NCBI GenBank assembly: GCA_964036045.1
Contig: OZ038378.1
Location: 41,230,001 to 41,294,000, forward strand
DNA length: 64,000 nucleotides
Origin: Eutreptiella sp. 'Long Island Sound 2002'
Taxonomy: Eukaryota; Protista; Euglenida
Direction: 5' to 3'
Every line of letters starts with the position of its first letter. Position 1 is the first letter of the stretch. Shown here in pieces: positions 12,480 through 47,372 of the stretch. The translations under genes were made by a program, and so were the position numbers. The notes under the pieces were generated by a model that worked only from the letters and a program-made list of their open reading frames with translations, was not told the origin of the DNA and searched no databases.

Positions 12480-12504
12480 CTTTCTGAGTGTCTTTTTTTT
12501 TTCG
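12480..12504 (+). other. Euglenid spliced-leader relic, copy 1
   Basis: CTTTCTGAGTGTCTTTTTTTTTTCG versus the Euglena SL as I recall it, (A)CTTTCTGAGTGTCTATTTTTTTTCG: 24/25 identical. Not followed by GT. Confidence 0.85.
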
Positions 12505-12520
12505 ATTCATGAAACTGGTA

Positions 12521-12540
12521 CTGAGTGTCTATTTTTTTTG
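12521..12540 (+). other. Euglenid spliced-leader relic, copy 2 (5'-truncated)
   Basis: CTGAGTGTCTATTTTTTTTG: 19 nt exact match to the SL, then G in place of CG. Confidence 0.8.
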
Positions 12541-12722
12541 GGTGTCTTCTTGCACATGGGCTGCCCGGGACACCATGGTCCCTAGCCTCTATCGTTGAAG
12601 CCACTGCTGACTGCGACAACACCGCCGTCACCTCTGACATTAGAAAGCCCTCTTGAAGTTGACAACTTTGAGACCATCACTGACGCCACTGTCGACAACA
12701 GCAAGCCCCTCTGAAGTGCGAC

Positions 12723-15092: not shown

Positions 15093-15139
15093 ACCCTCCC
15101 CCCTTCACTCACTCATCTCTCCCTCCATCTCTCCGACAG
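15093..15139 (+). promoter_or_regulatory. Polypyrimidine tract + AG, candidate trans-splice acceptor for element 1 gag
   Basis: ~40-nt C/T-rich tract, AG at 15138-15139, ATG at 15183. Confidence 0.4.
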
Positions 15140-15182
15140 TCTCGTTTTTCATCAAGGTAGTCAGGCCTCCCCGCAAAGGCAT

Positions 15183-16356
15183 ATGGACGAATTCGATGGG
15201 GACGGAGCCTGGTCCTCGGAGCGGCTGCTGGCTCACGACGAGTCCGTGCTTGACGCGGCATGGGCTGAGCTCATGCAGCAACACTGGCGGGCGACGGAGG
15301 TCCCGCTAGAGCGGCGCGGCACCGTGCTCGACGTGGGGATCAACAGCTGGGTCCGGACGGCGCGCCTCAACGTGTCCAAGCTGGCGGTCATCTTCAATCG
15401 CGGGCTGGGGGTGTGCCTGGTGTGCAAGAACTTCGTGGCGTACAGAGACCCCTTTCCCGTACGGCCCGGGACCTGCATGGGGCATCGAGGTACCCAACGT
15501 AGAGCTTTTGCAGCCCCAATCGGAGGCGGCCTTCGAGCTCTGCGCGTCACTGTAAAAACTCGAGCGCCGGGCGGGGCAAGGAGCGCACGGCGCTGGTGGC
15601 GACAACAGCGGCAACGCGGCGGATCCATCGGGCACGCAGCCAGCGTACGGCCCAGGGGACAATAGAGGGCACAACGACAGGGCGAGCGACAAGGTCAAGT
15701 GGAACGTCCTGACGGCGTCGGCGGCCCGCAGCACGACGCGACGGCCGGGGGCCACGAGGTAGACTATCAAATCATGCAGGGCGCTGGAGCAGGAGCTCAA
15801 AAACCACGCGGCGGAGAGCGAGGCGGAGCCTAGCGCCTGGGCGCGAAAGGTGTGGAAAATCGTGCTGGTCTGCGACGTGACCGGGGCTGACGAATTGAAG
15901 AACAAGGCCCGGGAGCGACGGAGGAAAGAGAGGAAGCTGGAAAAACGACAGCGCCGGAAGGAGCGCAAGCGGCGCGGTAAAAGCAAACGGCGAGACTCTA
16001 GCTCCGACAGCAACGACTCATCGAGCTGCAGCAGCAACAGCAGCAACAGCTCGGGGTCGTCATCATCGTCGTCGGGACGATCCTCGCGAGCGGCAAGAAG
16101 CAGACCAAGAGCACCGCGCCGGGCGGGAAACGACATCGCAGGGCGCAAAGAAGGAGAAATCTGGCGGCGCACAGGCTCAGCCGCCAACACCGAGTTCACC
16201 CTACTGGACGGCCGCCGCCACTTTAAAAGTAAGCGCTCAGGGGCCTGGGAAGACTGCACAGACCCGCCAAAGTCGAAGTGCACAGACTGCAGCCAGGCAC
16301 ACTGGTACTTCGACAGGGACGAGTGGGGCTGTGTCAAAGGCAAGGGCACCAAATGA
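15183..16356 (+). pseudogene. gag-like ORF(s) of element 1, frameshifted
   Basis: K/R- and S-rich tract, then CTDCSQAHWYF knuckle directly upstream of the YR. Confidence 0.65.
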
Positions 16357-16368
16357 CAGCAGGAGCGC

Positions 16369-17925
16369 ATGCTGCCCGTGGCGGAGGCCGTCGAACGCCT
16401 TGGGCACGCTATGGGGGACGGCTGCGGCGCGGGGTACGACGCCAGTGTCGTGCGGGGCCTCAGCAAATCCACGCTAGACGGGTACCTGGGGGCCCTCGCG
16501 AAGCTCCGGAGGCGCGAACGCATGAAGTCGGGGTCCGGAAGAAGGCGCGTGTTGGAGGACGAGCTCGGCGACATCGCTGCGCAGAACGTTGGGGAGGGCA
16601 ACATCAAGAAACTACTCTCGGGGTTGCGGCTACTCGAAAAACTGGGATGGATCAAAAGTACCGTACGGCCCGGGGACTGGCACCTCGTTCCGGGGGTGGA
16701 GAAGGAGCATGAGCTGCAGGGGCGAGGCGCCGTCAAAGAGTGGGCGAGCATGGAAGCGTTGCGGTACATTGCGGGCATCGCGTGCACCAGGGCGGAGTGG
16801 CAGCTCCTTGCGCTGGCAGCGGTGTCGTGCGCCCACTGCCTCCGAGCGAGCGAAGCAATCACGGCCCACGTCGAGGGCAGCGAGTTGGTGTTCCAGGACA
16901 CCAAGTCCCGCAGCGGCGAGCAACGGCAAGAGATGGCATAGTGGACGGCGAAGTGGGCCGCATTCCTGGCGCGCCTCAAGGCAAGCCACGGATACCACCC
17001 CGACGTCCCTGCGTGGTTTCAAGGAACGGGCGGGCTACACAGGGGACTCCACAGCGTCCTGGACCGACCCCGCGGATCCTTCAAGTACCTGCGCTGGCAC
17101 TCGTTCAGACGATTCGGGGCAGCCCAGCTCCACGGCCTTGGACTTCCAGCGCAGTTCATCATGCTCTGGGGGGGGGGGGGGTGGAAGTCAACGGCGGTGG
17201 CGGATATATACTACAAGGCGCCGCCGCGATGGCAGTTTGTGCGAGGGGGACCCATTCCCCTGCCAGAGTACGGGGCAAGCGAAACGATGGCGCGGATGCA
17301 GCCCGGGACAACGTTGGGGATGTGGCCAAGCTGGATTAGGAGCGATCTCGAGATCCCCCAGGTGCGACTTGCTCGGGCAGAACCGAGTGCGGTGGGCAGT
17401 ACTGCCCACGTGCAGAAAAGGTCCCGAACGGAGTCGTTCAAGCGCGACCGCCGCCCAAGACCGTCAAACGCCACGGGGGGGCGACGCCAGGAGCGCGGAG
17501 GAGACTGCCAGCGGACAGCGGAGGCGCAGGCAAACCGGACGGAGAAGCGGCAGGCGGTGCATAGGCATCACTGGGACGCGCGGGGGGTGACGATCGAGGA
17601 CGAGCACCTGGCGCGGGCGATCAGCGAGCTGCCGGGAGTGAAGCGGGGCCGCAGGGGCATGGTCCACAAAGGCGTCCAGGAGCTGATCATGGCGGCGGCG
17701 CAGCTAAGGCTGGGGTCCGGCGATGCTACTGCGAAGCTGCGACTCACTGCAGGGGGTACTGGACAACGGACTGGACGGCGAGGAGGACGGGTATTACTTG
17801 TCGGAGGACGAAGACGAGATGGACCCGGAGACGGCGGCAAAGGGGCTCGGATCGGCGGGCCGTGTGCACGTGCATGCGCCGCTCTGGAGGCGGCCGGCGC
17901 CACAGGATCTCCTGAAGGCTTATGA
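16369..17925 (+). pseudogene. Tyrosine recombinase of element 1 (one TAG at 16939-16941)
   Basis: Catalytic set in one frame: LRASEA (R), DTKS (K), WHSFRR (HxxR), GWKS (W), DIYY (Y). Confidence 0.92.
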
Positions 17926-19008
17926 GAAGCACGCCAAAACCAGGGGGGCCGACCTGAAGTCGCACTGCACTAAGCTTCCGCTCATGATGCGGGCCCTGTG
18001 CGTAGACGCGCGGGGCGTGAAACGCACGCGCCTCAGGCCCACCTCACGGGCATTCCTGTGCCCCAAGAATAGGCAAATGTGTAGAACGATCTTGGATGCA
18101 TCTCCTATAAACGAGGCACACCCCAGACGGCCCCAAAAGTTCACCCTCCTGGGCCTGGAACAGCTCAGCGACTAGATGCGGGGGGGGGGGGGGTGCGTGG
18201 ATGGCCAAACTCGACCTCCAGAATGCATTCTGGAGCGTTGTGCTCCCGGGGGGCTGGCACAGGGTTTTTGTTCTGCAAACCGCCGACGTGCGGTCGTACC
18301 GCTACACGCGCCTCCCCTTCGGATGGCACTACTCCCCCCTCATCTGCCAGTCACTCGTCCGGGGTATCGTGGCTGCCGCCCTGCGAGGCGTGCGGGCCCG
18401 GGCATGGGTGTATATAGACGACATACTCGTCGCCCTCGCAATCCATCCGAGGTGCGGTGCGCTGTGCGGCTCATCATCCGGCACCTGCAGCGGGCGCGTT
18501 GTATAATTAGCCAGAAAAGCGAAACAACACCCACGATGGAGCTCAGCTTCATTGGCAAACAAATAAACACGGATGCAAGATACTTCCAAAACGTCCCTGG
18601 CGGGCTGCGCAGTGCGCTCCGAGCATGGGTGAGGGCCATGGGCCGTGGAACCATCCAGCCGTGCAAGCTCAGAAAGCTGCTTGGGCAGCTATGCTGGCTG
18701 TCAAGGCCCAATGCCGGCCTCTCTTGCTTTATTGCGGGGAGCTATCAGGCACTGGACTCGGGCGCGCGGTGGTTCACACGGAGTATGGCGCGAGGCCTCG
18801 GCACCCTGATTCTGTTCAGCGCTGTAGCCAAGTCCTATCCGCCGGACAACCACGAGGGAGGGGCACAACTGGTGCCGGGCAAGGGCGACCTCCTACTGTT
18901 TGCGGACGCGGCACCAGAAGGGGTACGGTTCAGGGTAGGGCTGGTGGGCGACAGGCGATTCCGCCGCTCCGTCCGCTGCCCGGCATGGGTTACGTCACTC
19001 CAGTCTGC
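17800..19008 (+). pseudogene. RT/RNase H of element 1, disrupted
   Basis: AFLCPKN, AKLDLQNAFW, RLPFGW, YIDD and RH LFADA. TAG at 18173-18175 and a frameshift at the poly-G run. Confidence 0.92.
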
Positions 19009-19013
19009 AGTGG

Positions 19014-20887
19014 GTGCATGGAGGAATCCTGAGTTGTGCCTGTTCAATGGGGGCAGGGATGCGGGGGCTGAACATCGGAAACACAAGGCACACCACCAGC
19101 CGATGCCCCGCGAATGAGGCAGAATACTACATCACCCTAGGGAAAACCACGCTCCACGATTGGCAGCCAAACCCCCACAATCGTGGGGTACTCCACCGGG
19201 GCACCACCTACCAAGACATGGCGGCAGCCATGGCAAGAAAGGAGCTGTACCAGGACATCCTAGCGACACAACCATGGAACATAGATCTGTCCGATAGTGT
19301 GGTCTCCCCGGTGCGACTGCTACCCGACCACAAGGCACGGCCACACTCACCCACCGTAGATGCACTGAGCAGCATGAACCCCGGGGACACAGCAGTCTGG
19401 ACTGTGCCGTTACACACATCTAGGAAAGAGGAGTCTTTCACAAATGAGGGGCGGCGGATAGTGTGGACGGGAAACCCAACGACCGTAGTGTCGGCCATCA
19501 TTGATGCCATGGAACGAATGCTACAACAAGAGTCACAGGCACGCTACCTGTGGGTGACATTAGAAACGAAACTTCGGCCCGTCGGCCCGGCACATGTGAT
19601 GCTCCAGTTGGATGGAAGGGGGATCATGGGGAAGTTGCGACGCAAGATGGTTGCCGCCATAGTCGACAAATCCGGGTACTTTCAGGTTGCGAGGACCACG
19701 TCTCCTGAGCAGCTGGACGTAACTAGAGTGTCCATGTGGGACGTACGCATGGTAGCATGCCTGTTGAGCAGCACTGCTCAATGGCTTCCCTATCAAGATC
19801 CCGAGCCGGTACTTGCAGAACCCGCAGGTGTTTCCCCCACGGGTGGAAGTCCCGCCCAGACCTTACCGGTTGCTGTTGCCCAGTTCGGTTGAAAAAAGAA
19901 CCCAATTCTACCTTTTCGTAAATTCCTCCACGGATGACGCATCCTCGGTGGCCCGCCGTAACTCGGTGTTCCCATGGACGGGCGCGACGCGAATAGCCGC
20001 CCCGGATGAGACAAGTTACTTGTGGGAATACCAAATCCCTCAGGTGCTCCATGACAGAATGCAGGCCTTCCTGGAACACCGGGACACTCAGGTACAGTGG
20101 CTCGACCTCATCGACCACGAAAAGTTGTACATAAGCGAAACCCAATGAAGGGAAAGAAGGGATACAATATATCAAGTCCCCAAAAGACTTGGCGGTTGAA
20201 CTGGCGGCGGCAATGGACAAGGACTTGGATGACAATGTTCCCTTGCCTCGCCCGCCCTTCTCGACAGAGGTGTTCCCGACGGGTGTGCCACACATGCGGT
20301 ACCAGCGCATTGTGACACTTGCCAACGAGAACCAGGCCTGAGAGGTGGTACGAGGGCTATGGCAGAACAACCGGTTGGTACTGAAGAAGCTGACGACGGA
20401 TCGTCGCGTCAGATTTGGGGTGTGGGGGGCAAGGACGGAGGAGGACCGGCAACGGGCACCCCGAGAACCGGTACTGGAAGGGCAGGCGCTAATTATCGCG
20501 CCGTCTGGCGTGTTTGCGGCCACCGTACGCAAATATGCGGCGCTGTTCGGTCTCTTCACCACAGTGTCGACCCGAGGAGCATCCCACATATTGGGGCGCA
20601 CCGAGTATGTGGTCACGTATGGCCGCAAGCTGAGCGCTATGATCAGCCACGGTGTCACGCTGGACTGCACAGTGGGTGAGGTTACATTTGAGGCAAATTG
20701 CACGGAGGATGACCCCATGGGAGCCAAACGGGCCTTCGGAGAGAGGCAGGGACAAATGCTGGACAACCAAGAGGACATGGGAGATTGGTGGAGGATGGAA
20801 ATGGGCCGAGAGTTGGGTGCGGAGACGGCGGTGGTCGAGGAGGCCAACCGCCTGACGGCTGACAACCTGGCGGCCCTTTCGGGCTGA
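19014..20887 (+). pseudogene. Unknown ORF (~550-600 aa across frameshifts and a stop) upstream of the LINE; candidate ORF1
   Basis: Consecutive ORFs 19014-19892, 19813-20148 and 20345-20887. Paralogues at 6900-7450 and 36620-38150. Confidence 0.6.
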
Positions 20888-21599
20888 ATCCCTTGCACAT
20901 CACCACAGGACACACGGGGTTGCACGGGGAGCACACAGGTCCCCCCACAAGGGACGACACACGGCGGCACGGCTGGGGGATACCGCGAGGGACCGCACGG
21001 GACAACACCATCACTGGGAACGCCACTGGGAGACACGACACAGGGGATCATATTTCACAACACACCCAACCAATACTTGACACACGCAATCCTGTGGTCT
21101 ATGATGTGCATGAATCTCAGGCACAAACCGCGGCGTTGGTGGATTCGCATGGTGGTGGCCATACTTGCCTGCCAAGTGGCCCTGTCCGTCGAGACCTCCT
21201 CTGACACACATACCCTAAGCACAAGTAGAAAGTCGTGCCGTGCCCGCATCCGACGACGGCATGAGCCGCGTTCGTCATGGTTCCTGGACAACATACCATG
21301 GTACTGGAGGGTGCTCACGGGTGCTTGGGGGAAATTCTACCCCACAGAGTACTCATCCCCATGCACGACACAGCACGCTGAATGGCCTGCCTGCCGTGAT
21401 GACCTGCCCTACCAATGGCAAGCGGCCCCGTTGTGAGACACGGCGCAACGACTGGTGACCCTGTCAAATGACGTGCCCCCAAACCCTAATAGAGCGCAAC
21501 AGGTTTGCTGCCGGGACCCAGTCATACTGCCTCATGCCCGATGGAAACTTTAAACCCTAACACTATCGGTTGATGTGCACCCAAACCGAGGTCACCCCA

Positions 21600-24500
21600 A
21601 TACGACCACGTTGCACGCCCTGACTCTGAACGTTGGCGGCCGCATCTCAGCAGGCGGAGGTGGGGCCGCCTCCAGCAAGAAATAACTGCCTCCTCCCCCC
21701 ATATCATTGCCCTCCAAGAGGTCCGCTTTAAAACAGGTGAAGCCCACCTTGCATACATTGCAAAGGCCTGCCCAAACTACCAAGCGCTCGCTCATGACGA
21801 CAAACGCCCCGACATGATGTTTCTTGTGCATGAGAGGGTCCACAAATACTGCAAATTGATGGCCCACCGAGCGCCCCATGCCATAGCTCTCCGCGTCCAG
21901 CTCCCGGGCGTGCCTGAATTTACCTTGGTGAACCAGCATGGGCCGTTCACCTAACGGGAAAGGGAGGCCTTAGACGCCTGGATTGCTTCCGTTCCCAATG
22001 TGGGCATTCTTGGAGGGGACACTCAATGACTGAATGTGGCACGCAAGTCCAGGTCGCCGGAGGATAGGGCACGACTACTCGACACCGGGCGCTTTGTTGA
22101 CCCGCACTACCAAACGGTACCTCAACCACAGGGCCCGAGCCACACCCGAGGGGGCAAACGCCTGGTCGCGCTCCTCCTGTCCCCAAACAACATGGAATGC
22201 CCTCACGCCGGTGGCCTACCAAGTGACCACGTTCCCGTCGGCAAGGGGCCACGCAGGTGTGGAAATCCACACCACGGTCGTGCTCCTTGAGCCGCAGTCT
22301 CCAGATCCAGACGTCATGAGCATCCGAGACTGGACGGGTAGAGACCTGAAGCGTTTCCGTGCACATATGGGAAGGTGGTACCGAGGCGTCCCGAAAAACA
22401 TGACCCTGGAGACTGCCCGTAGTATGGTGCCGAAAGAGATTGCCCGGTATGTCGCTGCACACAAGAAGCCCGACAAACGACCGGGCCAGGCTCACCAGGA
22501 TTTGCAGACCCGTCTCGCCCAGAAACCTTTTGACCACACCGCGCTGAAGCACTGGGGGGAGCACATGCGACGGAAGCGACACACGGAGGTGATGAAGAAA
22601 CTACGCCGCTTCCGCAAATCCGCGGTTGGGAGCACAGGGACGTTCTTTGCGGACCTCGCCACGTGGCTTGTGAGGCCGGCCAGCGTCTCGTCCATGTCCC
22701 CCACTCTGGCATCGGCGACCAAAAGGTTGCCTGATTTTGCGGGGGACCCGCATTGGGACCCTGAGAAGGCCTTCCAGGTTTTGCCCAGTCTCCGCGTGCC
22801 CGACACCCCCGTGAGTTCCGACTCCGCCAACGTGGCGCGAGTTCCACGACGTGGCCAATCAGCCCAAGAAAAAGGCGATGGGAATGGACGCAGTTCCGCC
22901 GCACACAATACAGTGGCTGCCTGAGAACGTGCAATGGATCCTATACAGGAGAGTCTGTGAGGTTTGGCACCATGGACAGATGCCGACAGATTGGACTGAC
23001 GCCCGCATATCACTGTTGTACAATAACGGCGACCCCAGGGATGCGAGCAACTACCGACCTATAGCAGTGTCCACCTGCATGTACCAAATTACCACGAAGT
23101 CGATCGTGCGGCGCATCAAGACACCCCTCACCGAAGTGCTTTCTGAACACCAAGCGGGAGGGCGAAGGGGACATACCACACTGTCCCAAGCTATAAAACT
23201 ATGGTCGTCGGCGCTGAACATGCCGGAGACACCGGATGTGGTACTGCTCGATATTGCCAAGGCGTATCCAAGCACCCCCCACCCGCTGCTGTGGGCTGCA
23301 ATGCAGCAGGTGGGGGTACCGGATCGCTACATCTCCATGATGCAATACACATACCAAGAGACGCGGTGCTACTATCGGGTGAATGGGGAAAAACACTCAT
23401 ACCACCAGAGGAGGGGGGTGAAGGAGGGGTGCCCCCTCTCCCGCCTACTCTTTTGTGTGGTGTATGAGATGTTTCGAGGGACGCTGGCGGTAGAATTCCC
23501 CTCCGTCCACTTCTGTGCGTACATGGATGATGTGGCCTTCATCTCGCCGGACCGGTGGACTACGATGGCCGTGCTTAGGAGGGTCACGGACTTGGGAAAC
23601 ACGCTGGGCTTCCACCTGCACAAGGGGAAAACAGAGGTGTACTGCTGGTCGGCAACCTACAAGGTGGATCAGCTACTGTGGGACGGGCAGGTTAATACTG
23701 TCAGACCCCCCATCTTCAGCCACCCGGGACACATCATTGCACACCCAGAGTGGGCACACAAGGCGCGGTCCGACTACCTGGTATTGATTAGGTCGGACCT
23801 AGCACAATATGCACACATTCCCATGGATGGCTGGGAACGAAAACAGGTGGTCATCTCCATCTTGATGCCCAGGTGGCTCCACCGGGCGGTGCTCATCCCC
23901 TTGGACAGGTGGTAAAAAGAAGTAGACGACCTGTGTTCGGTGTTTGTCCATCACCCTAAAGGCATGGTCCCGGGACGAAATACTAAACAACTAAGTGCCC
24001 CGGTATCTTGCGGAGGCATGGGGTTGCACCAGATGTACTGGGCCACCGGCGGCGATTCATCACAACTATGCAGCACACCATACACCACCATCACCAAGCA
24101 TTTCGGGTATGTATGAACGCATCAGTTGAACGTACCCAGGCGCCCTTTTTTGCGTACGTGACCTTGTTGAACTCAATGGGAGCAATCTCGGGCATATCAC
24201 TGCAGCACCCCCGTCGCCGTACCGGGTGGCCGAGGCTTATCGACAGTGAGGACACGCAGGACGGTCGCATGATTCACAATCAAATGGCCCCCGTCGGCCA
24301 AGAAGACTTAGCGCACCGGTACGGCCTTGCCAAACCTCGGTGGCATGTCGTGGAAGGAGGGCAGGTCCCGGCAGCCTACCAACTCATTGTGGTAGGGGGC
24401 CGTGAAGTGTACACCAACGGCTGCGAGCCACAGGGGACAACATGGTATACGGATGGAAGCAAGAAGGGCGATCCGGCGGGTATGGGGGGCGCCACGGCCG

Positions 24501-26025
24501 ACTGTCGAGCAGGGTTCGGACTCCACTGCGGACCACTGCACTTGATTGGACGGGTGCGGGGTCCTCAAACCCTGTACCGGGCGGAGCTCATGGGCATGTA
24601 TGTAGCCTCCTGCCTGGCACAAGGTGGTGATGAGGTAGTATTGGACAACCAAGCCGCAACGGATTGTGCGACGGCCGCGCCACACCGCCAAGTCTGTGAC
24701 GTGGACGTCCGCCAGCCATTAGCAGAGGAGCTCCATGACAAGTCACTGATGCCCAGGTGGGTGCCACGCCACCGGGAAGAACGCCAGGCGCGGACCATTC
24801 AGGAAGTTCGAGACATACGGGGCAATAACCTGTCGGATTTGCTGGCGTCCATGGGCAGCGAGCTCCTAGTGACACCATACACGCCAGATGCGCCGCACGG
24901 CATAGAAGTGGGGGGGGCACGGAGGCACCCACACCAGCAAAAAATTGGATTACTGCGATGCGCCCACACGCCACACCAGAGGGGGTGCACTGGGCAACAT
25001 GGCTGCCCCTGAAGCCAAAGCGCCGCAGGTTGTGGCTTCAGTGGTTGTGCGGGAACGTGTGGTGCAAAGGGTGTACGCCACCATGGCAGAAGTCGACCCA
25101 ACCGTGTGCCCTGTGTGGGTCCACACACCAGGGAGCGGCACAGACACGGATTGTGCTGTGTGGGACGTGGAGGACACTGTTCCTGGACGAGTGGGCGAAA
25201 AGCTGGGGACCGTGGGGGTCTATGGCCTGGCAGTGGCTCTCGACAACAACGCCAGACAACCTTGCCCGTGTCGCGAAGTTCCACATTACCCTGTCTCTTG
25301 TGTGTTCGATCCCTCCTGACCACATGCCCCATTTTCGGTACAGGGTGGCGGTACACCAGTACAAGTGCATGCAGCTGGCGGGTGAGCTGCGCCACAACCT
25401 ACCCATGCCGCAGGACCCGGTAGAGGAGCAACGCCCCTCATCGGGTGGAACGGCCATTTGGTACACGGCCTTCCGCCGCAGGGCCCAGTGCCTGCCCCCT
25501 ACCGAGGAACGCCTTGTGCGACAGTGCCACAACAACCCCCGAAAACGCCTTGCGGCTGGCGGCCACCAAAGGCCGGCAAAACCCAAAAGAGACCACAGGC
25601 TGGAAACGAGACGCACGGTGGCGAAACTCCTGCGTCAACCGTACACTGTCCCAAGGGCATGTATGGTAATCAGGGCTCTACCGGTGCTGACAGGGGGGAC
25701 AGGCTCGCTGGTGCGGAGACTTTCCTCGACGCAGGCATGCACTTGACACCGTATGTGACCCCCGCAAAACAGTGGCGGCCGGTTACGGGGGCAACCTACG
25801 TGGCTGCCAGCAATCTGCTGCAAACGGCCCGATCACTGATCCGGGGAACTGTTAGGGGAATCCTGGCGCAACGAAAGGTCACTCACTGTCAGAGTGGCGG
25901 TGACGTGGGCCGCCCGCGTGGACACCTGTGCCAGGGTGCTCGCCGTGTCCGCCCAACGCACACGGTTCTGGTTCCACCACAGTGTCCGCGTGACGCTCTA
26001 CGCGGTGCACCGTGCCCGTCAGCGT
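21600..26025 (+). mobile_element. Non-LTR retrotransposon ORF2 remnant: APE endonuclease - RT - RNase H (I-group/ingi-like domain order)
   Basis: ILGGD(x)ND and SDHVPV (APE); NYRPIAV, QAGGR, LDIAKAY, GVKEGCPLS and YMDD (RT, 22851-23915); WYTDGS, RAEL, LDN and GNNLSD (RH, 24008-25012); CALCGSTH...C downstream. Confidence 0.92.
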
Positions 26026-26173
26026 ATCAAGGGATTCGCCTATAGGCGAATCACAGGATTCACCCCATAATACCACTCATATGCACTATCACTATAGAAT
26101 CTTTTAAAGATTTTTGGGTTCTCGGGCCCGTCAGGCCAAGTAAAGAGATCCAGACCAAATGTCAGCCATCAGC

Positions 26174-27455
26174 ATGGAGTCCCTCACCTTCAAAGATTTC
26201 GTCTCCAAGGGCCAGTTCGAGGTCTACAAGAGCACCCTCCCCGCAGACCACGGCGAGAGCGGCAGTGGAAATCATGCAGCGCATCGGAGATGCGGGGGTG
26301 GACCATGACAAATGGCTGCAGGACCTCAAGGTGGCCTCTGGTTGGGACGAAGATCCACTCAAACTCCTCCACGCCATTGCTGGCTATGAGAGCTGCTGTC
26401 GATGCACAATTGAGGTCCAGACAAGGGAGTTCAAGGCGAAAAAGGAGACGGAGCTGGCGGTCAGCGACGAGATAAGGGCTCGCATCAAGTCGTTTTTGGA
26501 GTCGCAGTGGAGCACTTTTGTGAAGCTCTGCTCCAGTGCCGAAATCGCGAAGGCGGGAATGGAGGTGGCACAGCTGGCAGCCAAGCACCGCCTAACCATC
26601 TGAGAGTTTGCTGAGGACATCCCGGAGACCCGAAAGCCAGAAGACCCCGAATTCGTGCTAAAGGCAATGGGAGCGCTGGCCCTCTTCGACAACTTCAAGT
26701 GGATCATCATCCGGGAAGGCCACAAGCTGAATCTGGTAACGGCAGATGCATCGGATGTGGGAAAACCAAACGCATCTGTAGACCCGGAGGAGCAGGAGAT
26801 CTCAAAACAGATGGAGGCGCTCAAAGTGAGATTGGAGCACAAGCGGAGAGCAAAAATCGTGAGACCCCTGACCTCTGCAGCGCTGGACGAGTTTGTTGAT
26901 GCCCCGGAAAATGCCAAATGGATGCGTGAGACGACAGCTTCACTGAAGAAATTCCTGGAGTCCAACGAGGAGGAAAAAGGGGAGACGCTGGCAAAGGAGC
27001 TGTGGGAGGTGATGCTGGTCTCCAAGGACAACTATAAAGAGAAGTACCCCAGCGGGGGCCACAGTGTGACTCGTGGCTCACATAAGGGCACCGGGAAGCA
27101 ACCACAATCCCGGGTTGCGCCGAGGTCTACCAAAGAGTTGGAAAGACTGGGAGCACGCAGATGGATTGAAGCGACCCGAAAAGGGAGATTCAGGTTCGCG
27201 GAGTTGGAGAACATCACCTACTACTGCACTGCGAGGGGCGACAACACATATGAAGTGGCGAAGGGCCCCCCGGGGCCTTGTGGAGAATGTGGAGACAGCC
27301 ACCGGATATGGGACTGCGAGAGTGGACTCCCCCCGGAAGGGGGGGGAGGGGGGGGCATGGCGGAGGACAGCCCAAACAGGTTCCTTTGGCATGAAGGAGA
27401 AGTGGAGGGGGAGAGCGAAGACGACGACATCCCCAGGGAATGGCCGGCATACTGA
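26174..27455 (+). pseudogene. gag-like ORF of element 2 (frameshift near 26255, TGA at 26601-26603)
   Basis: Helical, charged protein ending in YEVAKGPPGPCGECGDSHRIWDC knuckle. Confidence 0.8.
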
Positions 27456-27470
27456 CGGGCATATGCCGCA

Positions 27471-28382
27471 TTGTGTCGAGCCCAGGCGGACAGCAAGGAT
27501 GGGGTCCTGGAAAGCAACTGGCAAGTCCTCGCAAACTCCTGTAGCACGACATCGCTGGGTACGTACAAGATGGGAATGCGACGACTCCGACAGACACATA
27601 TCGCCCGGCCGGAGTGGGGACCATACAAGGTCGTGGAGCAAGTCGTGTGTGATGCCATTCGAGAGGGAAAAGGCAGCAGTTCGGTCAAAACAATCCTCAA
27701 TGCGGCGGCCATGGCATACACCATGGGGGTGGTTAGCGAGCCGGTCCCAAAACGACTCTGGAAGGCATTCAAGGCAGCGCAGCGGCTGGAAGAGAAGTCA
27801 ACACAGGAGTGGGGCAGTTTTGAGGCACTGCAGATCATGGCGCACCAAGTGGATTCAGAGCTGGAGTGGTGTGTGGTGGGACTCGCGATACTTTCAACGT
27901 TGCTGGGCCTCAGAGTCGGCGAGGCGGCCAGCATCAGCTTCCACAGGCTGGGGGTTCTAGCAGGGACGGCGGCGTTCTATGACCGCAAAGTCCACAGGGC
28001 TTGGATTACCCGTACGGTTTCAGGAGTGGCCCTCAAATGGTTGCAGTTCTGCGCCTGGATTGCACAAAGATGCTGGAACCTCGACAAGTTCCAGCGACTG
28101 GTCTCTGAGGACAAACTGCAGCGTGTCATGGCGACCCTTTTGCGTGGATCAACGCGGAAGGACCTCAGGTGGCATGCATGGAGGCGCCTGGGCCCAGCGA
28201 CCATGTACAAGGCTGGGGGCAAGATCCCTAGCATCAAGGCGTGGTTCAGGTGGAGGAGCACAAGAACGGCAATGGCCTACATCAACTGCCCGCACCCAGG
28301 GCGCATCCGGCACCCATTCACAACGCCTACCCCCCCCAGTTACCTCAAGGGGAGGCCATGGATTGCGGGAACGGCAACCTGA
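27471..28382 (+). CDS. Tyrosine recombinase of element 2, apparently intact (303 aa)
   Basis: GLRVGEA (R), YDRK (K), WHAWRR (HxxR), WFRWRS (W), AMAY (Y). Confidence 0.93.
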   Translation: MCRAQADSKDGVLESNWQVLANSCSTTSLGTYKMGMRRLRQTHIARPEWGPYKVVEQVVCDAIREGKGSSSVKTILNAAAMAYTMGVVSEPVPKRLWKAFKAAQRLEEKSTQEWGSFEALQIMAHQVDSELEWCVVGLAILSTLLGLRVGEAASISFHRLGVLAGTAAFYDRKVHRAWITRTVSGVALKWLQFCAWIAQRCWNLDKFQRLVSEDKLQRVMATLLRGSTRKDLRWHAWRRLGPATMYKAGGKIPSIKAWFRWRSTRTAMAYINCPHPGRIRHPFTTPTPPSYLKGRPWIAGTAT

Positions 28383-30522
28383 CGGTGTACGGAGTTCTGG
28401 GCCCCTGAGGCCAACGATATCCCTGAGGGGAGCACCCCAGAGAGCGACTCTGGAGATTCCACGTGCGCTGGATCATCCTCCGATAGCCCCTCACCTCGGA
28501 AGGCCGATGGCAGGAGGGGAAAGAGGAGACGCAGTGCGTGAGGAGGCGAATGGCCGGACGGCCTGTGGGGTAGGGGGGGGGGGAGGTAAATCGAGACGGG
28601 CGTCACCCGACAACGAGGTGGGCAAGCAGCACAAGCCACGTAGGTTAAAGTGCCTCATGGGAGTTGGAGGAGGAAGTACTGCAGGAGCGTGGGTCACATA
28701 TAGGCGGGCGCGGGCGTGTGCGTGGTTGGCTTCGAGACGGATCGAGCGGGTCTCGAATATCCCGCGAAATGAGCTTTTTCGGGCCGCGCTTGCGGTAATC
28801 CTCCGGGCGCGGGAGCGCCTCAGAGATGTGGACGGTGGGCAGGCACACCTGGACACGATCCTGCGCCACATGGGGGATCTGCATGAGCTCAACTGGGACC
28901 TGCTGGGTCACGACTACGACGGATATGACGGGGATGGCCCGTCGGGAGGTATCTCACAAAGAATGATTGATGCGGGCCTTGGAGAGAAGGGCAGCCTGGA
29001 CATCCCTTTAGATGTGTGGAACGCGAACATCCCAAAGCGCCTCATTTGGGATATACGGAGTTGGAAGTCGGGGCACGATTGTGGAGGATTTGATGTATGG
29101 CAGCCGTCGTTGCACACCGAACGCATGATCAGAGTGCTCGTGGACGATGGGTTCCTGTGCAGGGACCCCACGTGTTTGGGTGCCCTTGAGTGGGAGGACC
29201 TCACGGACAATGTGTCGGCTTTCGTTAAGCCCAAAAATGATGTGAAGTGCTCCTTCATCATTGACATGCGAAATCTGAACGACTGCTCGAAGGTGCCGCT
29301 GCGCAAGGTCAGGCTTCCATCTATTCACACGGTCTGTCAGACCATCCAATGGGAGATACACCGTGGAGCACCATTGTGGGGCATTACCTTGGACAAATCC
29401 AACTTCTACTGAAGCCTGCAAATCCCAGCTGAAAATTGGGGACTGTTTCGCATACAGGGGGCGCACTTCCACTGCCTCCCGTTTGGGTGGAAGTTTTCCC
29501 CGGTATTGGCACAGGACACATTGGCAGCGCTGTTGAAGGAGTTCTTTGACAACCACGTGGAGGGGATCGATGTCTACCGTTTCCATTATTTGGATGATGT
29601 GCTGATCTTGTCACGTGACAGGGAGTGCATGAAAAGCCTCGGCCATCGGCTGGCGTGTTTCTTGACGGCAAAGGGCCTGCGCATCTCCATAAAATCCTGC
29701 CTCGAGCCACATCAGAATGTCCTGTGGCTGGCGAAGATGTTCGACCTCGCCAAAGGGGAGGTGCGGAACACAGACAAAATGCTCACAAAGTGCTTGGGGA
29801 TTGCCATAAAAACGGCCTGCTCGCCTGTGTCTCCAAAGGTGGCGGAACGGGTCACGGGAAAAATGCAATGGGCATTTCGACCACGAAAAGGGGTCACCCT
29901 GATTCTGCAGGGGTGGCACAGGTTCCGTTGGGGACATCATCGGTTTCAGCACCGCCCGAGCCCGGCCCTGATATCGGCACTGTTCGATGCGCTGGCGATA
30001 TCGTACGTGCCAGCCACGGTTGACCCAAGGCCTGGGCATTTTGGCTTTGCGCCGTTCCTGGCAGTGGATGCAGCAGAGACTGCTGGTGGCTACCGCCTGG
30101 GTATCTGTGGACGCAATGGAGTCATGCGAACGCGAAAGATCCCGGCGCAGAACCAGCAACAGGCGGAGCTCGGTGGTGTCCTACATGCCTGTAGGTTTGC
30201 GGTGACCCAGAAGTGGCACAGGGTCTCATTGTTTGTGGACAATACAGCGGCCTGCTACAGTGCAACCAATATGACGGCGTCGACGAGGGCATGTACGCAA
30301 GTGAAGATACTCCGTGCTTTTTGGAATTTGTTGTGGCACACGGGCTTGGTCTTGAATGTTGTCTGGGTTGATACTGCGCGCATGCCTGCTGATGTTGTGT
30401 CCCGTTTGCCAGACCTGACGCCAGCAAGCATCACCAAGGCAAAAATTGAGGCGGCACATAAGTGGGGTACATTGTGCGGAGAGCTGCACCTTGTGCAGAG
30501 TTTTGGATCGGTCCGACTGTAG
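27979..30522 (+). pseudogene. RT/RNase H of element 2; single TGA at 29410-29412 at a conserved Trp
   Basis: AFVKPK, LDKSNFY*, CLPFGW, YLDD; RH LAVDA, QAEL, VDN, ADVVSR. Both parts are in frame 1. Confidence 0.95.
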
Positions 30523-30566
30523 CGGGGGGGGGTGGGGGTTTCATCGCGTGAGCGATGGCTGGAGTG

Positions 30567-30589
30567 CCCCCTCTTTTTTGCTGTAGCAG
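30567..30589 (+). promoter_or_regulatory. Polypyrimidine tract + AG, candidate splice acceptor for ORF4
   Basis: CCCCCTCTTTTTTGCTGTAGCAG ends 11 nt before the ATG at 30601. Confidence 0.5.
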
Positions 30590-30600
30590 GCCCCTGCAAC

Positions 30601-31125
30601 ATGTCTGAGTGGGGCGACCGACATGAGGAGGAGTCCCATGACGAGGGGAAAGTGGGGTCGAAACGCCCACGAGGATCTCGGGGCCCGGAGGGCAAGCTGG
30701 CGCAGAAGGCGCGCACTCTGAGGCGGAGACCTGAGAGAGCGGAAGAGCACCTCCATGCAGAACAGCCCAGATACCGCCTGGGAGGGATGACCGAGCAATC
30801 CTTCGAGTTAGTGCTGTGCCGGCCAGTACCAGAACGGGACCTCCACAACGCCTGGCAGACCTTCTGTGGATGGATCACGCGACGCACCAGGGCGCAGTAT
30901 GCCATGGCACGGGTCGAGCCTGCTCAGAAGAGTAAGGACCAGACCCAACGCCACCTTTACCTCGACCGCCACGAGCTGCGACTGGCACCAGGAGTCAGGC
31001 TGACGATGTCCTTCACCCAAGAGGCCACTGCAGTGCAAAGAGTCACCCTCAATGGAAAAGCGGACCTCATCAAAGATGTATTCAAGCCTGTGAAGGATGA
31101 TCTGGAACAAACGGACTCAGACTGA
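30601..31125 (+). CDS. Accessory ORF4 of element 2 (174 aa), unknown function
   Basis: Intact ATG-to-TGA ORF between RH and B1. Charged N-terminus; the C-terminal domain is shared with 13675-13782, 5781-6125 and 46314-46670. Confidence 0.7.
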   Translation: MSEWGDRHEEESHDEGKVGSKRPRGSRGPEGKLAQKARTLRRRPERAEEHLHAEQPRYRLGGMTEQSFELVLCRPVPERDLHNAWQTFCGWITRRTRAQYAMARVEPAQKSKDQTQRHLYLDRHELRLAPGVRLTMSFTQEATAVQRVTLNGKADLIKDVFKPVKDDLEQTDSD

Positions 31126-31770
31126 GACGAGGCTGACATGAGGATGACTGTCACTCCTGCACGAACTGTCCATGGCGCTAATGTACCAGAGTGAGAAAAA
31201 AGTGGGCTGGAGAGGAGAGGTGGGGGAGAGGGACGACACGTGGTGCAGGCAGAGCAGGACCATACCCGGGGTATATAAAAGAGAGCTCCCCTGGCAAGTG
31301 CGATGGATGAGACGGCACAGTGTGAGTCAGTGAGCGAGCACGCCTTTATATGTGGAACCACGAGAGCCATCATGAGTGAGAGTCAGAGATGACCCACGGT
31401 GCCCTTCGGGCCTGGCGCGCCAATGAAGGAGCAAGCATCAGTGTTGGCTTTGTGTACTGTGTATGTGTGAGCTGTACCTGTCAGGAGGTTAGGGGGGAAT
31501 CAAGGGATTCGCCTATAGGCGAATCACAGGATTCACCCCATAATACCACTCATATGCACTATCACTATAGAATCTTTTAAAGATTTTTGGGCCCACCCAC
31601 CCGCACGGACACTTACTCACACTTCAGGAACACCATTGATACTATCATGGAGAAGTGTATCATAGATCCACGGCACACGAGTCTACCGCCAGTGAAGGAG
31701 CAAGCATCAGTGTTGGCTTTGTGTACTGTGTATGTGTGAGCTGTACCTGTCAGGAGGTTAGGGGGGAATC

Positions 31771-32562
31771 CTTTTGGGCACACTATCAAGCCTGCGCCGC
31801 CTAGCCACACGGGCCCTTCGGCACCTGGACGTTTTGGAGCTGCCACTGCGCTCTGCGCTCGCCCACACAGCCACAGTTGCCCGGGCCAACATTAGTCACC
31901 AATTGCTGTCCTACCAGAAGTTCCGCACATGGGCTGCTATGGTGACCCATAAACTGGGGGACAGAGACAAGTGGCTCACCGCGGCCATGTGCGGCGCCTT
32001 GCAACTTGCCCGCACCAGCCAATATAGGTCCATGCGAAGATGGCGGCAAGAGTCACTCGACGAGGTGCGGACCTGTATGAGCAGGTGGCTGATGGACCAC
32101 CAAACCTTTGTGCTTTTCCGCCACTGGGTGCGACAAGGCTATGCGGAAGTCCACGCCCGCCATCGCTCAGACGTCGCTTGCCCCGCCGGACGCTCCATGA
32201 GTATGGTCACAATACGCGGTACGACATCTAGCACTTCACGAGCACTTTGGGCGGCCTCATCTAGCACACGTGGCAATGTCGGCGTCGGATCAAGTCCTCG
32301 ACCCATTCGCCCCCGTGCCTGCAAGGCGCCCCGACCAAATCGGCGTCAACGAGCCCCGGGCACCAATTACCCGCCCAGCAGGGGCCGTCTGCCGTCCCTT
32401 CGCAACGGCACCAGCCGAAGCACACCTCTGTGCACCACAGCAATGCCCCGCAATGCGGGCAACCGGGCCGGGAACGGGAGCCCCCCCCCCCCTCCCCGAG
32501 TTTCTCGGGAGTTGCCCCTCGACGTGGGTAGTTGCGAATGGCCACGAGACCAAGGACATTGA
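31771..32562 (+). pseudogene. Continuation of the LINE C-terminal region split by element 2
   Basis: Joining 26028 to 31771 reads HRARQR-I-LLGTLSSLRR in frame into ORF 31774-32562. Confidence 0.75.
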
Positions 32563-45076: not shown

Positions 45077-46324
45077 TTGTATACCCTCTGCAGCAAATCC
45101 GGGTACTGTGACTATGTGCAAAGAATAATGTCGTATATTGGTCCCGAGTCACCTTGGCCACCGTGGGCTTCTGTTGTCAAGGCAGTCTTTTTGACCTCCG
45201 ACCTTTACCAAGGGTTACGTGACGGGCTTCGCAAGCCCCGTGTGACACCAAGTATTGAGCAGGCTGACGGTGGCCATCTGAGTCTTAAGTTGGGTGATAC
45301 CATTATTGACACAGACACAGGGAAAGTTTTGAAGGAGGAGGGTAGAGTTGCGCTACTCCCTTTTTGGGCAGGTTGCCGTGTTCCCAGCTTTATTACGGCA
45401 TTGCCATTTCTCTGCATCCGGATTGAAGTCCGAGGTATGTGGACGTTGGCCCTCCACAATATTGTGGCACAATATGTATTGAATGGTATTTTGGTGGCAC
45501 TCACTGGTGAGACTACGGACGTTCGGGCCCGTGTTAGCAACCTAAAGGCATCCTGTGCTGAGGAATTTTTCCATGCCAATGTATGTGTGTACAACCTGTC
45601 CAAGGCATCAGCACTGTACAACATTGCACGGACTGCTCTTGCAATGTGTAGTTTGCACCAATTTTCTGCACGCCTACCCCGATATCTTTCTTATATTCCG
45701 GGCAGCTTGACGACTGCCATTCTTGTTGAAGTGTTCTGTTATTTGTTGTATGCATTACATTTGATTCAGCAAACTAGTACATGGGTAATGGTTTGCACAC
45801 AGCAACTAGATTTTTCTGCAGCCCTGTCCATTCAAAGCATGTTCCCTGTGAACATTGCAGTTCCATACTTGTCTGCGGAGAAGTCTGTTCCTGAGTCATT
45901 TGTTACTGATTTGAGGGTTGCTGTGTCGAACTGCGACACTGTGGCACCAATCCTGTGGGAACGAGTCTGTGAAGACCTTGCACATGGTTTTTTAGTGGAT
46001 TGTACGGGAAGGAAGTATGGAGAACAAGAAGCCGAGGCCACCCAACCAGAGGAAGAGGACGGTGAGTCCCGGAAACCCCCCCCCCAAATGTCAACCCAAA
46101 AGTCAACGACATGGCCCCTACACACAAATTCAACCAGCCCCAACGAAGGCCAAGCCCCAGCAAGAGCGCCAGCGTTTCAAGGTGCAAGCACTGAGCTAGC
46201 TGGACGCCATAGCGAACGAGGGGCCGCGGGCAGTCAATGCCGAGCTGACCACTATGGCCTAGGCCCGCAATCAGGAGATTTGGCTCTGACTGGACCAACT
46301 ACACAGCACCAGGATGCACTGTGA
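45077..46324 (+). CDS. Long hypothetical ORF (415 aa) inside the transposon; product unrecognised
   Basis: Length only; no motif recognised. Confidence 0.2.
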   Translation: MYTLCSKSGYCDYVQRIMSYIGPESPWPPWASVVKAVFLTSDLYQGLRDGLRKPRVTPSIEQADGGHLSLKLGDTIIDTDTGKVLKEEGRVALLPFWAGCRVPSFITALPFLCIRIEVRGMWTLALHNIVAQYVLNGILVALTGETTDVRARVSNLKASCAEEFFHANVCVYNLSKASALYNIARTALAMCSLHQFSARLPRYLSYIPGSLTTAILVEVFCYLLYALHLIQQTSTWVMVCTQQLDFSAALSIQSMFPVNIAVPYLSAEKSVPESFVTDLRVAVSNCDTVAPILWERVCEDLAHGFLVDCTGRKYGEQEAEATQPEEEDGESRKPPPQMSTQKSTTWPLHTNSTSPNEGQAPARAPAFQGASTELAGRHSERGAAGSQCRADHYGLGPQSGDLALTGPTTQHQDAL

Positions 46325-46364
46325 AATTGTGGACAATCATGGAGAGCCATCGCTTATGAGCGAC

Positions 46365-46988
46365 CAAGAACTCTACTTGGTGATGGTCCAAATCAACCGG
46401 ACCCCGAACACCCACGTTCTGACGAACATGCAGGTCCAGTGGCGACCCAAGAGTGCAGGCAAGTGGCACCCGTTCCAATGGGAGGCGATCCTGCACTGTC
46501 GGACGGCAGAGGGACACAGAGCGGTGCCCTCCTTTGTGAGCAGAAATGGAGACTGCCTGCATGTGTGGCTAACGTGCCGAGCTGACCTCTTAAGGCTGTT
46601 CCAAAGAACGCTCTCACGCAAACAGACCCGGTACCCGGAGACGCCCTACGGTTCCTCTACACGCTGCTGAGCACACCGCCGTGCGAACGGCGATATGCCG
46701 GATCCGGGACAACATGCAGGGGGGTGTAAGAAGCGGCAGAGGCACAAGAAAAACCCTTGGGGAGGGTGAGGAGAGGGAGCAAAGATGAGGAGGGAGAGAG
46801 AGAGCAAGACACAGAGAGAGAGAGAGGGAGACACAGATAGAGAGCTGAACAGGTCAGGGCTACAGTGTAGAAAGCATCTCTTCGTAGCTCAGTGTGTGTA
46901 TAGCACACCTCTTCTGTCCGGTAGAGGAGGGTTCCAACCCCGGGAGGGGATAGAGACCCACCGAACATCCCGAAAACCCCCTTTATGC

Positions 46989-47024
<36 letters not shown>

Positions 47025-47372
47025 GAGAGAGAGAGCGGGTCACAGAGAGGGTCACAAAGAGAGAAAGAGAGAGTGGGAGGAAGGCCAGAGAGAGAGAGAA
47101 AGAGAGACAACGAGAGAGAGACAGATCGAGAGAGTGAGAGAGAGAGACCCGCAAAGCGAGTGTAAGAGACTAACCGGCACTCTAGGAGGGTGGTGGGTGC
47201 AAGCTGACCCAAATGTACAGGCAGCCAACGCACAATCACAAACCACCTGGAGTGGTACAGAACTGGTCAGTGCTGCAGTGCAGCAAGGCGAAACAATGAA
47301 CTGAGTGGTGACGACCATGCGCCTGTGACACGGGGGCGTATGCGAGCCCAGTATCCGTTGCCTCATGGCCCC
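46365..47372 (+). mobile_element. Dispersed repeat, copy 2 (paralogue of 5740-6510), with expanded GA tract
   Basis: MQVQWRPKSAGKWHPFQWEAIL...WLTCRADLL and the shared 3' end CCGTTGCCTCATGGCCCC. Confidence 0.85.
46989..47035. repeat. (GA)n microsatellite within a GA-rich tract (~46780-47150)
   Basis: Direct reading. Confidence 0.95.

What the first reader, a model, noticed from the sequence alone, without database searches (positions are those of the whole stretch)
30567..31125. Possible trans-spliced subgenomic cargo gene (ORF4) that is independently retroposed
Seen: an intact 174-aa ORF after RH in an element whose core ORFs are broken, preceded by a textbook pyrimidine tract and AG. Its domain recurs downstream of genomic SL relics (12480-13782) and in 5'-truncated dispersed copies (5740, 46365; tip only at 1189). 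Inference: the element uses host SL trans-splicing to express a downstream accessory gene, and that mRNA is reverse-transcribed into stand-alone copies. The function of the domain is unknown. This is the best candidate in the window for an undescribed system.
Basis: partly seen in the sequence, partly recalled or inferred. Interest (0 to 1): 0.82.

Follow-up and report, generated by a model that had tools for sequence, protein, structure and literature searches.

The report
Extra conserved gene in Euglena retrotransposon
The 174-codon ORF is a real, selectively maintained fourth gene of a tyrosine-recombinase retrotransposon in a Euglena genome and has a relative that is the first gene of LINE-like elements, but there is no evidence that it is copied on its own, and its proposed trans-spliced expression is still untested.

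Summary
Confirmed:
- ORF4 (30601-31125) is intact and lies after RT/RH inside a gag-YR-RT/RH split-repeat element (26026-31767).
- It is preceded by one of only two strong pyrimidine tracts in the element, followed by AG.
- It is a real gene. The genome holds at least 150 copies. dN/dS is 0.25 (RT/RH 0.16, control frames about 1.1-1.4). About 120 of 150 copies have no stop.

Not supported:
- Independent retroposition. All 50 copies examined sit in element context, none breaks at the AG, and no spliced-leader (SL)+ORF4 junction exists in the genome.
- The "dispersed copies" at 5740, 46365 and 1189. They belong to an unrelated, very abundant repeat.
- The SL-preceded ORF at 12723-13900 as an ORF4 retrocopy. 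It is the first ORF of a long SL-headed LINE-like element, and its similarity to ORF4 is only borderline (E 0.035).

New:
- ORF4 has a solid distant homologue (27-30% identity), which is the first ORF of another LINE-like repeat.

Best reading: an ORF1-like, probably RNA-binding module shared between retroelement classes.

SL trans-splicing at AG 30586 is plausible but untested, because the available runs looked like DNA. Other agents of this scan noted SL-headed retrocopies elsewhere in this genome.

The parts
26026..31767 (+). Tyrosine-recombinase retrotransposon, order gag-YR-RT/RH-ORF4, with split direct repeats
   Evidence: ORF map. Weak Pfam hits to Phage_integrase, RVT_1 and RNase_H. 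Repeats 26026-26118 = 31499-31591 and 31418-31501 = 31687-31770. Empty-site joint 26025->31768 with 3 shared nt in runs X2, X3 and X5.
26175..27455 (+). gag-like ORF with a CCHC knuckle, broken in this copy
   Evidence: Translation. TGA at 26601-26603, where the other copies' contigs read C at 26601, and 2 nt missing at 26251.
27471..28382 (+). Tyrosine recombinase ORF
   Evidence: Pfam PF00589 E 0.011. Paralogues in the window at 16447-17223 and 57791-58405.
27979..30522 (+). RT/RNase H ORF, with one private nonsense codon at 29410-29412
   Evidence: TGA here; TGG in 27 of 30 copies.
30524..30538 (+). G-rich run of variable length just after the RT/RH stop
   Evidence: 10-15 G among 30 young copies. 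Older subfamilies have AAGGGGGAAAC instead. The spacer is in frame with RH in only 16 of 30 copies.
30567..30589 (+). Pyrimidine tract plus AG (30585-30586 conserved, 30588-30589 not): candidate 3' splice acceptor
   Evidence: A comparable tract plus AG lies upstream of the distant homologue P0052.
30601..31125 (+). ORF4: 174 aa with a disordered acidic/basic N-terminus, helix 29-54 and an α+β domain 57-170
31126..31417 (+). 3' non-coding region between ORF4 and the terminal repeats
   Evidence: 70-79% identity in divergent copies, where ORF4 keeps 82-87%.

Best explanation
ORF4 is a functional fourth gene of a Euglena tyrosine-recombinase retrotransposon family with the VIPER-like order gag-YR-RT/RH.

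It encodes a small protein with a disordered charged N-terminus, a long helix and a KA1-like α+β domain. The same protein module is the first ORF of a LINE-like repeat family in the same genome. It is therefore best read as an ORF1-like, probably RNA- or RNP-binding accessory protein that has been exchanged between retroelement classes.

It travels only as part of the whole element and not as a separate retrocopy.

It is translated from its own ATG (30601). The most likely route is a minority of element transcripts processed at the conserved pyrimidine-tract/AG acceptor (30567-30586), in Euglena most probably by spliced-leader trans-splicing.

Shown: the gene is real, selected, confined to element context and homologous to the LINE-like first ORF.
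Inferred: RNA binding, the direction of exchange and the splicing route.
For: - Copies and selection: at least 150 scored copies (487 candidates) at 73-97% aa identity, about 120 without stops. Random substitution at 13-18% divergence leaves only 2-7% of sequences open. dN/dS is 0.25, against 0.16 for RT/RH and 1.1-1.4 in the control frames. ORF4 is better conserved than the 3' UTR.
- Context: all 50 copies examined are joined to RT/RH upstream and to the terminal repeats downstream.
- Distribution: the only relatives among 5.8 and 1.84 billion proteins come from this species' assembly.
- Homologue: P0052 matches the profile at E 1e-5 and pairwise at 1e-9, and aligns over the full length. It is followed in four copies by the same ORFs, among them an RT with a YMDD box.
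- Structure: pLDDT 74.7 with the core near 88. KA1 domains fill ranks 1, 2, 5, 7, 8, 12, 17, 26, 28 and 33, including the RNA-binding KA1 of TUT1 and METTL16.
- Acceptor: the pyrimidine tract is rare in the element and sits 17 nt before the ATG. The first AG is conserved. A similar tract lies before P0052.
- Frame: the ORF4 frame relative to RH is not fixed.
Against: - There is no RNA evidence at all. No SL junction was seen, and the usable runs look like DNA.
- In many older subfamilies an in-frame ATG 17 codons upstream would make the 'acceptor' coding sequence (VPSFAVAG).
- The whole 78-nt spacer is well conserved, so conservation of the AG is not specific.
- The LINE-like nature of the P0052 repeat rests on a weak RVT_1 hit (E 0.01), one pairwise RT alignment (E 2e-5) and an endonuclease-like stretch seen by eye only.
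Confidence: 0.6

Rival explanations
1. The element makes an SL-trans-spliced subgenomic ORF4 mRNA, and that mRNA is reverse-transcribed into stand-alone ORF4 copies scattered in the genome.
For: - A candidate acceptor exists.
- SL-headed retrocopies do exist in this genome (earlier notes).
- The SL-headed ORF at 12723-13900 has borderline similarity to the ORF4 family.
Against: - None of the 50 copies is stand-alone or broken at the AG.
- There are no SL+ORF4 or SL+P0052 junctions in the genome, with a working positive control.
- The copies at 5740, 46365 and 1189 are an unrelated repeat.
- The SL-headed ORF is the first ORF of a LINE-like unit of more than 10 kb that is colinear in other loci.
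- DNA contigs showed no joint at 30586 or 30589.
Confidence: 0.07
2. ORF4 is made as a C-terminal extension of RT/RH by read-through of the TAG at 30520-30522. The spacer is open and in frame in this copy.
For: In the window copy the frame is open from 30523 to 31122. 16 of 30 young copies are in frame.
Against: - 14 of 30 young copies are out of frame.
- The open-frame classes 198-200, 219-224 and 232-235 aa are all common among 150 copies.
- The P0052 homologue is a free-standing first ORF.
- Homopolymer length errors in the assembly could blur this test.
Confidence: 0.08
3. ORF4 starts at the upstream ATG (about 191 aa), so the pyrimidine tract is simply coding sequence. Expression would come from an internal promoter, reinitiation or cis-splicing rather than SL trans-splicing.
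For: An in-frame upstream ATG and an open 17-codon extension (MGDGLRVPSFAVAGPGN) are found in many subfamilies, including the most divergent copy, where an indel is compensated.
Against: - The youngest and most numerous subfamily has lost that frame. There the upstream ATG opens a 10-codon uORF that ends at the TAG at 30584-30586.
- The P0052 family has a stop right after its upstream ATG and a non-coding pyrimidine tract.
Confidence: 0.2
4. ORF4 is a chance open frame with no function.
For: No Pfam family and no relatives outside this species.
Against: dN/dS is 0.25 with frame controls near 1. Open frames are kept at 13-18% divergence. A full-length homologue exists at 27% identity. The predicted domain is confident.
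Confidence: 0.01

Closest known systems
VIPER and TATE tyrosine-recombinase retrotransposons of kinetoplastids (Ribeiro et al. 2019, PMC6681497)
   Same: A retroelement with a tyrosine recombinase, gene order gag-YR-RT/RH, split terminal repeats, and a host in the Euglenozoa.
   Different: That paper never mentions an ORF4 and mentions euglenids only in a reference title. The present element carries an extra selected gene after RNase H and lives in Euglena. No phylogeny was made here, so membership in VIPER proper is open.
Accessory ORFs and domains of DIRS and Ngaro elements (DAM-like methyltransferase of DIRS; extra ORFs in some Ngaro, the latter from memory)
   Same: An additional module beside gag, RT/RH and YR in a YR retroelement. 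Modular exchange among Euglena retroelements has been proposed (bioRxiv 10.64898/2026.05.21.726589).
   Different: ORF4 has no methyltransferase or hydrolase signature and no Pfam match. Its relatives are first ORFs of LINE-like repeats.
LINE ORF1 proteins (e.g. L1 ORF1p: coiled coil plus RNA-binding domains; from general knowledge)
   Same: A small basic protein with a long helix followed by a compact domain. The homologue P0052 occupies the first-ORF position of a LINE-like unit.
   Different: There is no sequence or fold match to L1 ORF1p domains. Here the gene lies at the 3' end of a YR element that already has a gag with a zinc knuckle. RNA binding has not been tested.
KA1 (kinase-associated 1) domains of SAD/MARK/Chk1 kinases, TUT1 and METTL16
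Spliced subgenomic mRNAs of retroviruses, and SL-relic retrogenes of dinoflagellates (Slamovits & Keeling 2008, from memory)
   Same: Works-like analogies for expressing a 3' gene through a splice acceptor, and for SL sequences fixed in DNA by retroposition.
   Different: No spliced ORF4 RNA has been seen. The SL-headed copies in this window belong to a LINE-like element, not to ORF4.

Membership tests
Tyrosine-recombinase retrotransposon (order DIRS, VIPER-like arrangement) | Encodes a tyrosine recombinase instead of an integrase | tested here: met
   PF00589 is weak (E 0.011, below Pfam's cut-off). However, three mutually homologous YR ORFs lie beside RT/RH in the window and in L081.
Tyrosine-recombinase retrotransposon (order DIRS, VIPER-like arrangement) | RT and RNase H domains | tested here: inconclusive
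   RVT_1, RVT_3 and RNase_H match only at E 0.02-0.06. The ORF is homologous to an ORF in L081 whose precomputed record lists a Pfam RVT_1 hit.
Tyrosine-recombinase retrotransposon (order DIRS, VIPER-like arrangement) | Split direct repeats (A1 ... B1A2 ... B2) and insertion without a long target duplication | tested here: met
   Repeats 26026-26118 = 31499-31591 and 31418-31501 = 31687-31770. Empty-site joint with 3 shared nt.
Tyrosine-recombinase retrotransposon (order DIRS, VIPER-like arrangement) | Gene order gag-YR-RT/RH (VIPER) rather than gag-RT/RH-YR (Ngaro, DIRS) | tested here: met
   ORF coordinates.
Tyrosine-recombinase retrotransposon (order DIRS, VIPER-like arrangement) | RT/YR phylogeny places it inside the VIPER clade | not tested
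   No kinetoplastid sequences were fetched.
ORF4 / P0052 protein family (defined here) | Full-length significant sequence similarity | tested here: met
   P0052 and P0053 match the profile at E 1e-5 over 1.84 billion proteins. tblastn gives 1e-9. Alignment A2 has conserved motifs along the whole length.
ORF4 / P0052 protein family (defined here) | Membership of the SL-headed ORF at 12723-13900 (orf318 family) | tested here: inconclusive
   HMM E 0.035. 1-2 of 20,000 shuffles reach the score for the four best of seven paralogues; the other three are weaker (61 to 1,146 shuffles). The reverse HMM is not significant. hhalign P 0.028, probability 1.8%.
ORF4 / P0052 protein family (defined here) | Membership of the repeat at 5752-6084 and 46068-46732 | tested here: not met
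   hhalign P 0.023 and 0.13 against ORF4 profiles and 0.59 against the orf318 profile. HMM E 4-32.
Processed retrocopy of a trans-spliced mRNA | SL sequence at the 5' boundary of the copy | tested here: not met
   No SL+ORF4 junction was found with three patterns (for P0052). The control pattern finds 4 copies of the other family.
Processed retrocopy of a trans-spliced mRNA | Copy found outside its parental context | tested here: not met
   50 of 50 copies continue into RT/RH and the terminal repeats, or are internal rearrangements of the element.
SL trans-spliced mRNA | RNA reads joining the SL to the acceptor | not testable with these tools
   The single read search and the single lay were used. 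The holders look like DNA, and the RNA run had 8 listed short pieces, none at 30560-30620.
KA1 fold | Structural superposition clearly above background | tested here: inconclusive

The most novel reading that the evidence does not exclude
ORF4 belongs to a Euglena-specific family of KA1-like RNA-binding proteins that act as the ORF1 of LINE-like elements, including an element whose copies start with the host spliced leader. A VIPER-type YR retrotransposon captured this gene and expresses it as a subgenomic mRNA by SL trans-splicing at an internal acceptor. That would be the first retroelement known to use host trans-splicing the way retroviruses use cis-splicing.
Probability: 0.2. Interest if true: 0.7.

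Novelty: new variant of a known kind. Interest (0 to 1): 0.42.

Why it matters
YR retrotransposons with the VIPER gene order are described from kinetoplastids. Here a large, recently active family in Euglena carries an additional selected gene. That gene is shared with LINE-like elements, which gives a concrete case of module exchange between retroelement classes in a 2.3-Gb, repeat-rich genome. It also points to a lineage-specific ORF1-like protein whose fold and RNA binding can be tested. If the acceptor is used for SL trans-splicing, it would show how a multi-gene retroelement solves expression of a downstream gene in a trans-splicing host. For annotation, it warns that hundreds of intact ORF4 and P0052 ORFs are transposon genes and not host genes.

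Tried and rejected
- Pfam gave nothing for ORF4, P0052, the orf318 family or the 46290 repeat.
- Searches of 5.8 and 1.84 billion proteins found only same-species hits.
- ESM Atlas found nothing usable by features or by shape.
- Foldseek against PDB and the viral library found nothing below E 1e-3.
- The first AlphaFold run, with a shallow alignment, was poor (pLDDT 50) and was discarded.
- Reads: the run search returned one RNA metatranscriptome with a 0.07 share and six runs of unknown kind. Laid on 26000-31800 (5,801 letters), the latter gave even depth over the whole element, so they were treated as DNA. No SL loose end was listed, and 127 loose ends were not shown. This is no evidence against trans-splicing.
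- The deletion derivative L031 (27576|30643), considered as a possible gag+ORF4 non-autonomous family, is a single locus.
- TAG read-through and slippage at the G run were rejected as the general mechanism, because the frame relation varies.
- A synteny argument between the two LINE-like families failed. Their other ORFs show no tblastn similarity.
The upstream context of some P0052 copies and the long ORFs that carry the orf318 domain were therefore not read.

Full report
**Organism and setting.**
- The window is 57% G+C and lies in a 2.28-Gb assembly.
- At 12480-12540 it holds two copies of a motif that matches the Euglena gracilis spliced leader. The SL-specific primer ACACTTTCTGAGTGTCTATTTTTTTTCG is printed in PMC5654406.
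- All protein relatives come from one ENA assembly, which holds sequences identical to this genome.

**The observation.**
- ORF4 (30601-31125, 174 aa) is intact. It lies 78 nt after the stop of the RT/RH frame (TAG 30520-30522).
- It belongs to an element bounded at 26026 and 31767, with split direct repeats 26026-26118 = 31499-31591 and 31418-31501 = 31687-31770.
- Contigs of three runs join 26025 directly to 31768 with 3 shared bases, which is an empty site.
- The gene order is gag (with a CCHC knuckle), YR, RT/RH, ORF4.
- The core genes of this copy are broken by private mutations. RT has TGA at 29410 where 27 of 30 copies have TGG. gag has TGA at 26601-26603 and lacks 2 bases at 26251 relative to the other copies' contigs.
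- With so few lesions, an intact 0.5-kb ORF4 is expected by chance and shows nothing on its own.
- The pyrimidine tract 30567-30579 followed by AG 30585-30586 is real. It is one of only two stretches with at least 13 of 15 pyrimidines on this strand of the element.
- The first AG is kept in copies down to 80% identity. The second (30588-30589) is not.

**ORF4 is a real gene.**
- The genome holds at least 150 scored copies (487 candidates) at 73-97% protein identity. About 120 of them have no stop.
- Random substitution at 13-18% divergence would leave only 2-7% of sequences open. Six of the ten copies examined at that divergence are open.
- Against 13 divergent copies, dN/dS is 0.25 for ORF4 and 0.16 for RT/RH. 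The two control frames give about 1.1-1.4.
- ORF4 keeps 82-87% nucleotide identity where the 3' non-coding region keeps 70-79%.

**ORF4 is not independently retroposed.**
- All 30 best copies and 20 chosen divergent or partial copies continue upstream into RT/RH and downstream into the terminal repeats, or are internal rearrangements.
- None breaks at 30586 or 30589.
- One deletion copy (27576|30643) is a single locus.
- Patterns joining the 3' half of the SL to the ORF4 leader found nothing in 2.28 Gb. The same kind of pattern found four SL-headed copies of another family.
- The DNA contigs showed no joint at the AG.

**The claimed dispersed copies.**
- Places 5752-6084, 46068-46732 and 1204-1346 are copies of one repeat, truncated at the 5' end to different extents.
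- This repeat has about 2,000 candidate copies and an open frame of about 229 aa at its 3' end. It is followed by a tRNA-like stretch and (GA)n.
- It shares only a G[KR]ADL[IL] motif with ORF4. The tests are hhalign P 0.023, then 0.13 with the better profile, HMM E 4-32, and no relation to the orf318 family.

**The SL-preceded ORF.**
- The stretch from 12521 on is repeated at about 16 places. Five copies start exactly within the SL. Two ENA copies carry CTTTCTGAGTGTCTATTTTTTTTCG at their 5' boundary, with different flanks.
- These copies are colinear with the window as 12521-15037 | 19072-21343 | 21620-25241. They therefore run on through a non-LTR-type RT (22851-23915) and an RNase H (24008-25012).
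- The SL therefore heads a LINE-like element more than 10 kb long.
- A second YR element (15038-19071) and the ORF4-bearing element (26026-31767) have inserted into this LINE-like element.
- The ORF after the SL is the LINE-like element's first gene. It is frameshifted in the window and reaches 691 aa in L082.
- Its similarity to ORF4 is borderline. BLASTP shows nothing. The HMM of ORF4 alone gives E 2 and the HMM of ORF4+P0052 gives E 0.035. For the four best of seven intact paralogues, 1-2 of 20,000 shuffles reach the score; the other three are weaker. The reverse HMM is not significant. hhalign gives P 0.028.
- I put homology at about even odds. Either way, this ORF is not a retrocopy of ORF4.

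**A solid relative.**
- The profile search found P0052 and P0053 (E 1e-5). Pairwise tblastn gives 1e-9, and the alignment covers the full length at 27% identity.
- This family has about 670 candidates, many of them decayed.
- In four copies the ORF is followed by the same unit of at least 8 kb. That unit holds ORFs of 444 and 286 aa, an endonuclease-like stretch (seen by eye only) and an RT with YMDD (RVT_1 E 0.01; E 2e-5 against the window's LINE RT).
- Conservation among copies starts 160-835 nt before the ATG, without an SL.
- One copy (L071) lies right after a YR-type RT/RH.
- A pyrimidine tract with AG precedes this ATG too.

**Structure.**
- With the deeper alignment, the model reaches pLDDT 74.7, with about 88 for residues 55-170.
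- It shows a helix at 29-54 and then a ββαββββα domain.

**Expression.**
- The G run after the RH stop varies from 10 to 15 G. ORF4 is in frame with RH in only 16 of 30 young copies. A read-through fusion is therefore unlikely to be the rule.
- In older subfamilies an in-frame ATG 17 codons upstream would turn the tract into coding sequence. The youngest subfamily has lost that frame.
- SL trans-splicing at 30586 is the most natural route in Euglena. No RNA data could be brought to bear.

**Verdict.**
- ORF4 is a real and previously undescribed accessory gene of a Euglena YR retrotransposon, related to the first ORF of LINE-like elements.
- The retroposition story is not supported.
- The trans-splicing story remains open.

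Noticed in passing
window 12521-15037, 19072-26025 and on from 31768: One long LINE-like element whose copies begin with the Euglena spliced leader. It has a first ORF (691 aa in L082), a non-LTR-type RT at 22851-23915 and an RNase H at 24008-25012. In the window two YR elements are inserted into it, at 15038-19071 and 26026-31767. An autonomous retroelement copied from a trans-spliced RNA may be the most interesting thing in this window.
   Followed up: partly
window 21343-21597; also L063 8563-8993 versus L066: A 255-bp segment of the SL-headed element is inverted between the window and locus L083. A segment of about 430 bp right after the P0052 ORF is likewise inverted between copies of that family. 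These are invertible or palindrome-flanked segments inside retroelements, and they are unexplained.
   Followed up: no
own genome: The domain of the SL-headed first ORF (alignment A3) matches more than 100 further places at E about 1e-10. Most lie inside very long open frames (500-3,600 aa), so it is a widespread domain of large retroelement or host polyproteins. The sequences could not be fetched.
   Followed up: no
window 46068-47375, 5752-6511, 1204-1346: A very abundant repeat (about 2,000 candidate copies). It has a roughly 229-aa 3' ORF of unknown family, a tRNA-like stretch and a (GA)n tail, and its copies are 5'-truncated to different extents, as in LINEs and SINEs.
   Followed up: partly
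window 30524-30538: A G run of 10-15 bases directly after the RT/RH stop in the young subfamily only. Older subfamilies have AAGGGGGAAAC. It may be a polypurine-tract-like or G-quadruplex element, or partly a homopolymer assembly error.
   Followed up: partly
P0079-P0082, matching window about 13900-14200: The first ORF of the SL-headed element has an RS-rich N-terminus and, after the conserved domain, proline-rich stretches with PPPY and APPY motifs that resemble retroviral late domains.
   Followed up: no
L063 / L080 (ENA contig ctg9257): A P0052-type LINE-like unit of about 15 kb, with a nested RNase H-bearing insertion, lies between two stretches matching Pfam DHFR_1. It is apparently in an intron of a dihydrofolate reductase gene.
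   Followed up: no
L031 (G000:C15:24751346-24754828); run X3: A copy of the element with a 3.07-kb internal deletion (27576|30643, 5-nt microhomology) that removes YR, RT/RH and the first 14 ORF4 codons. It is a single locus in the genome, and the same joint is present in a run of 'organism B'.
   Followed up: yes
L064-L075, about 170 nt upstream of the P0052 ATG: A conserved G+C-rich leader with an apparent hairpin (GGCGACTCTCCC ... GGGAGCGCC), shared by subfamilies that otherwise diverge upstream.
   Followed up: no
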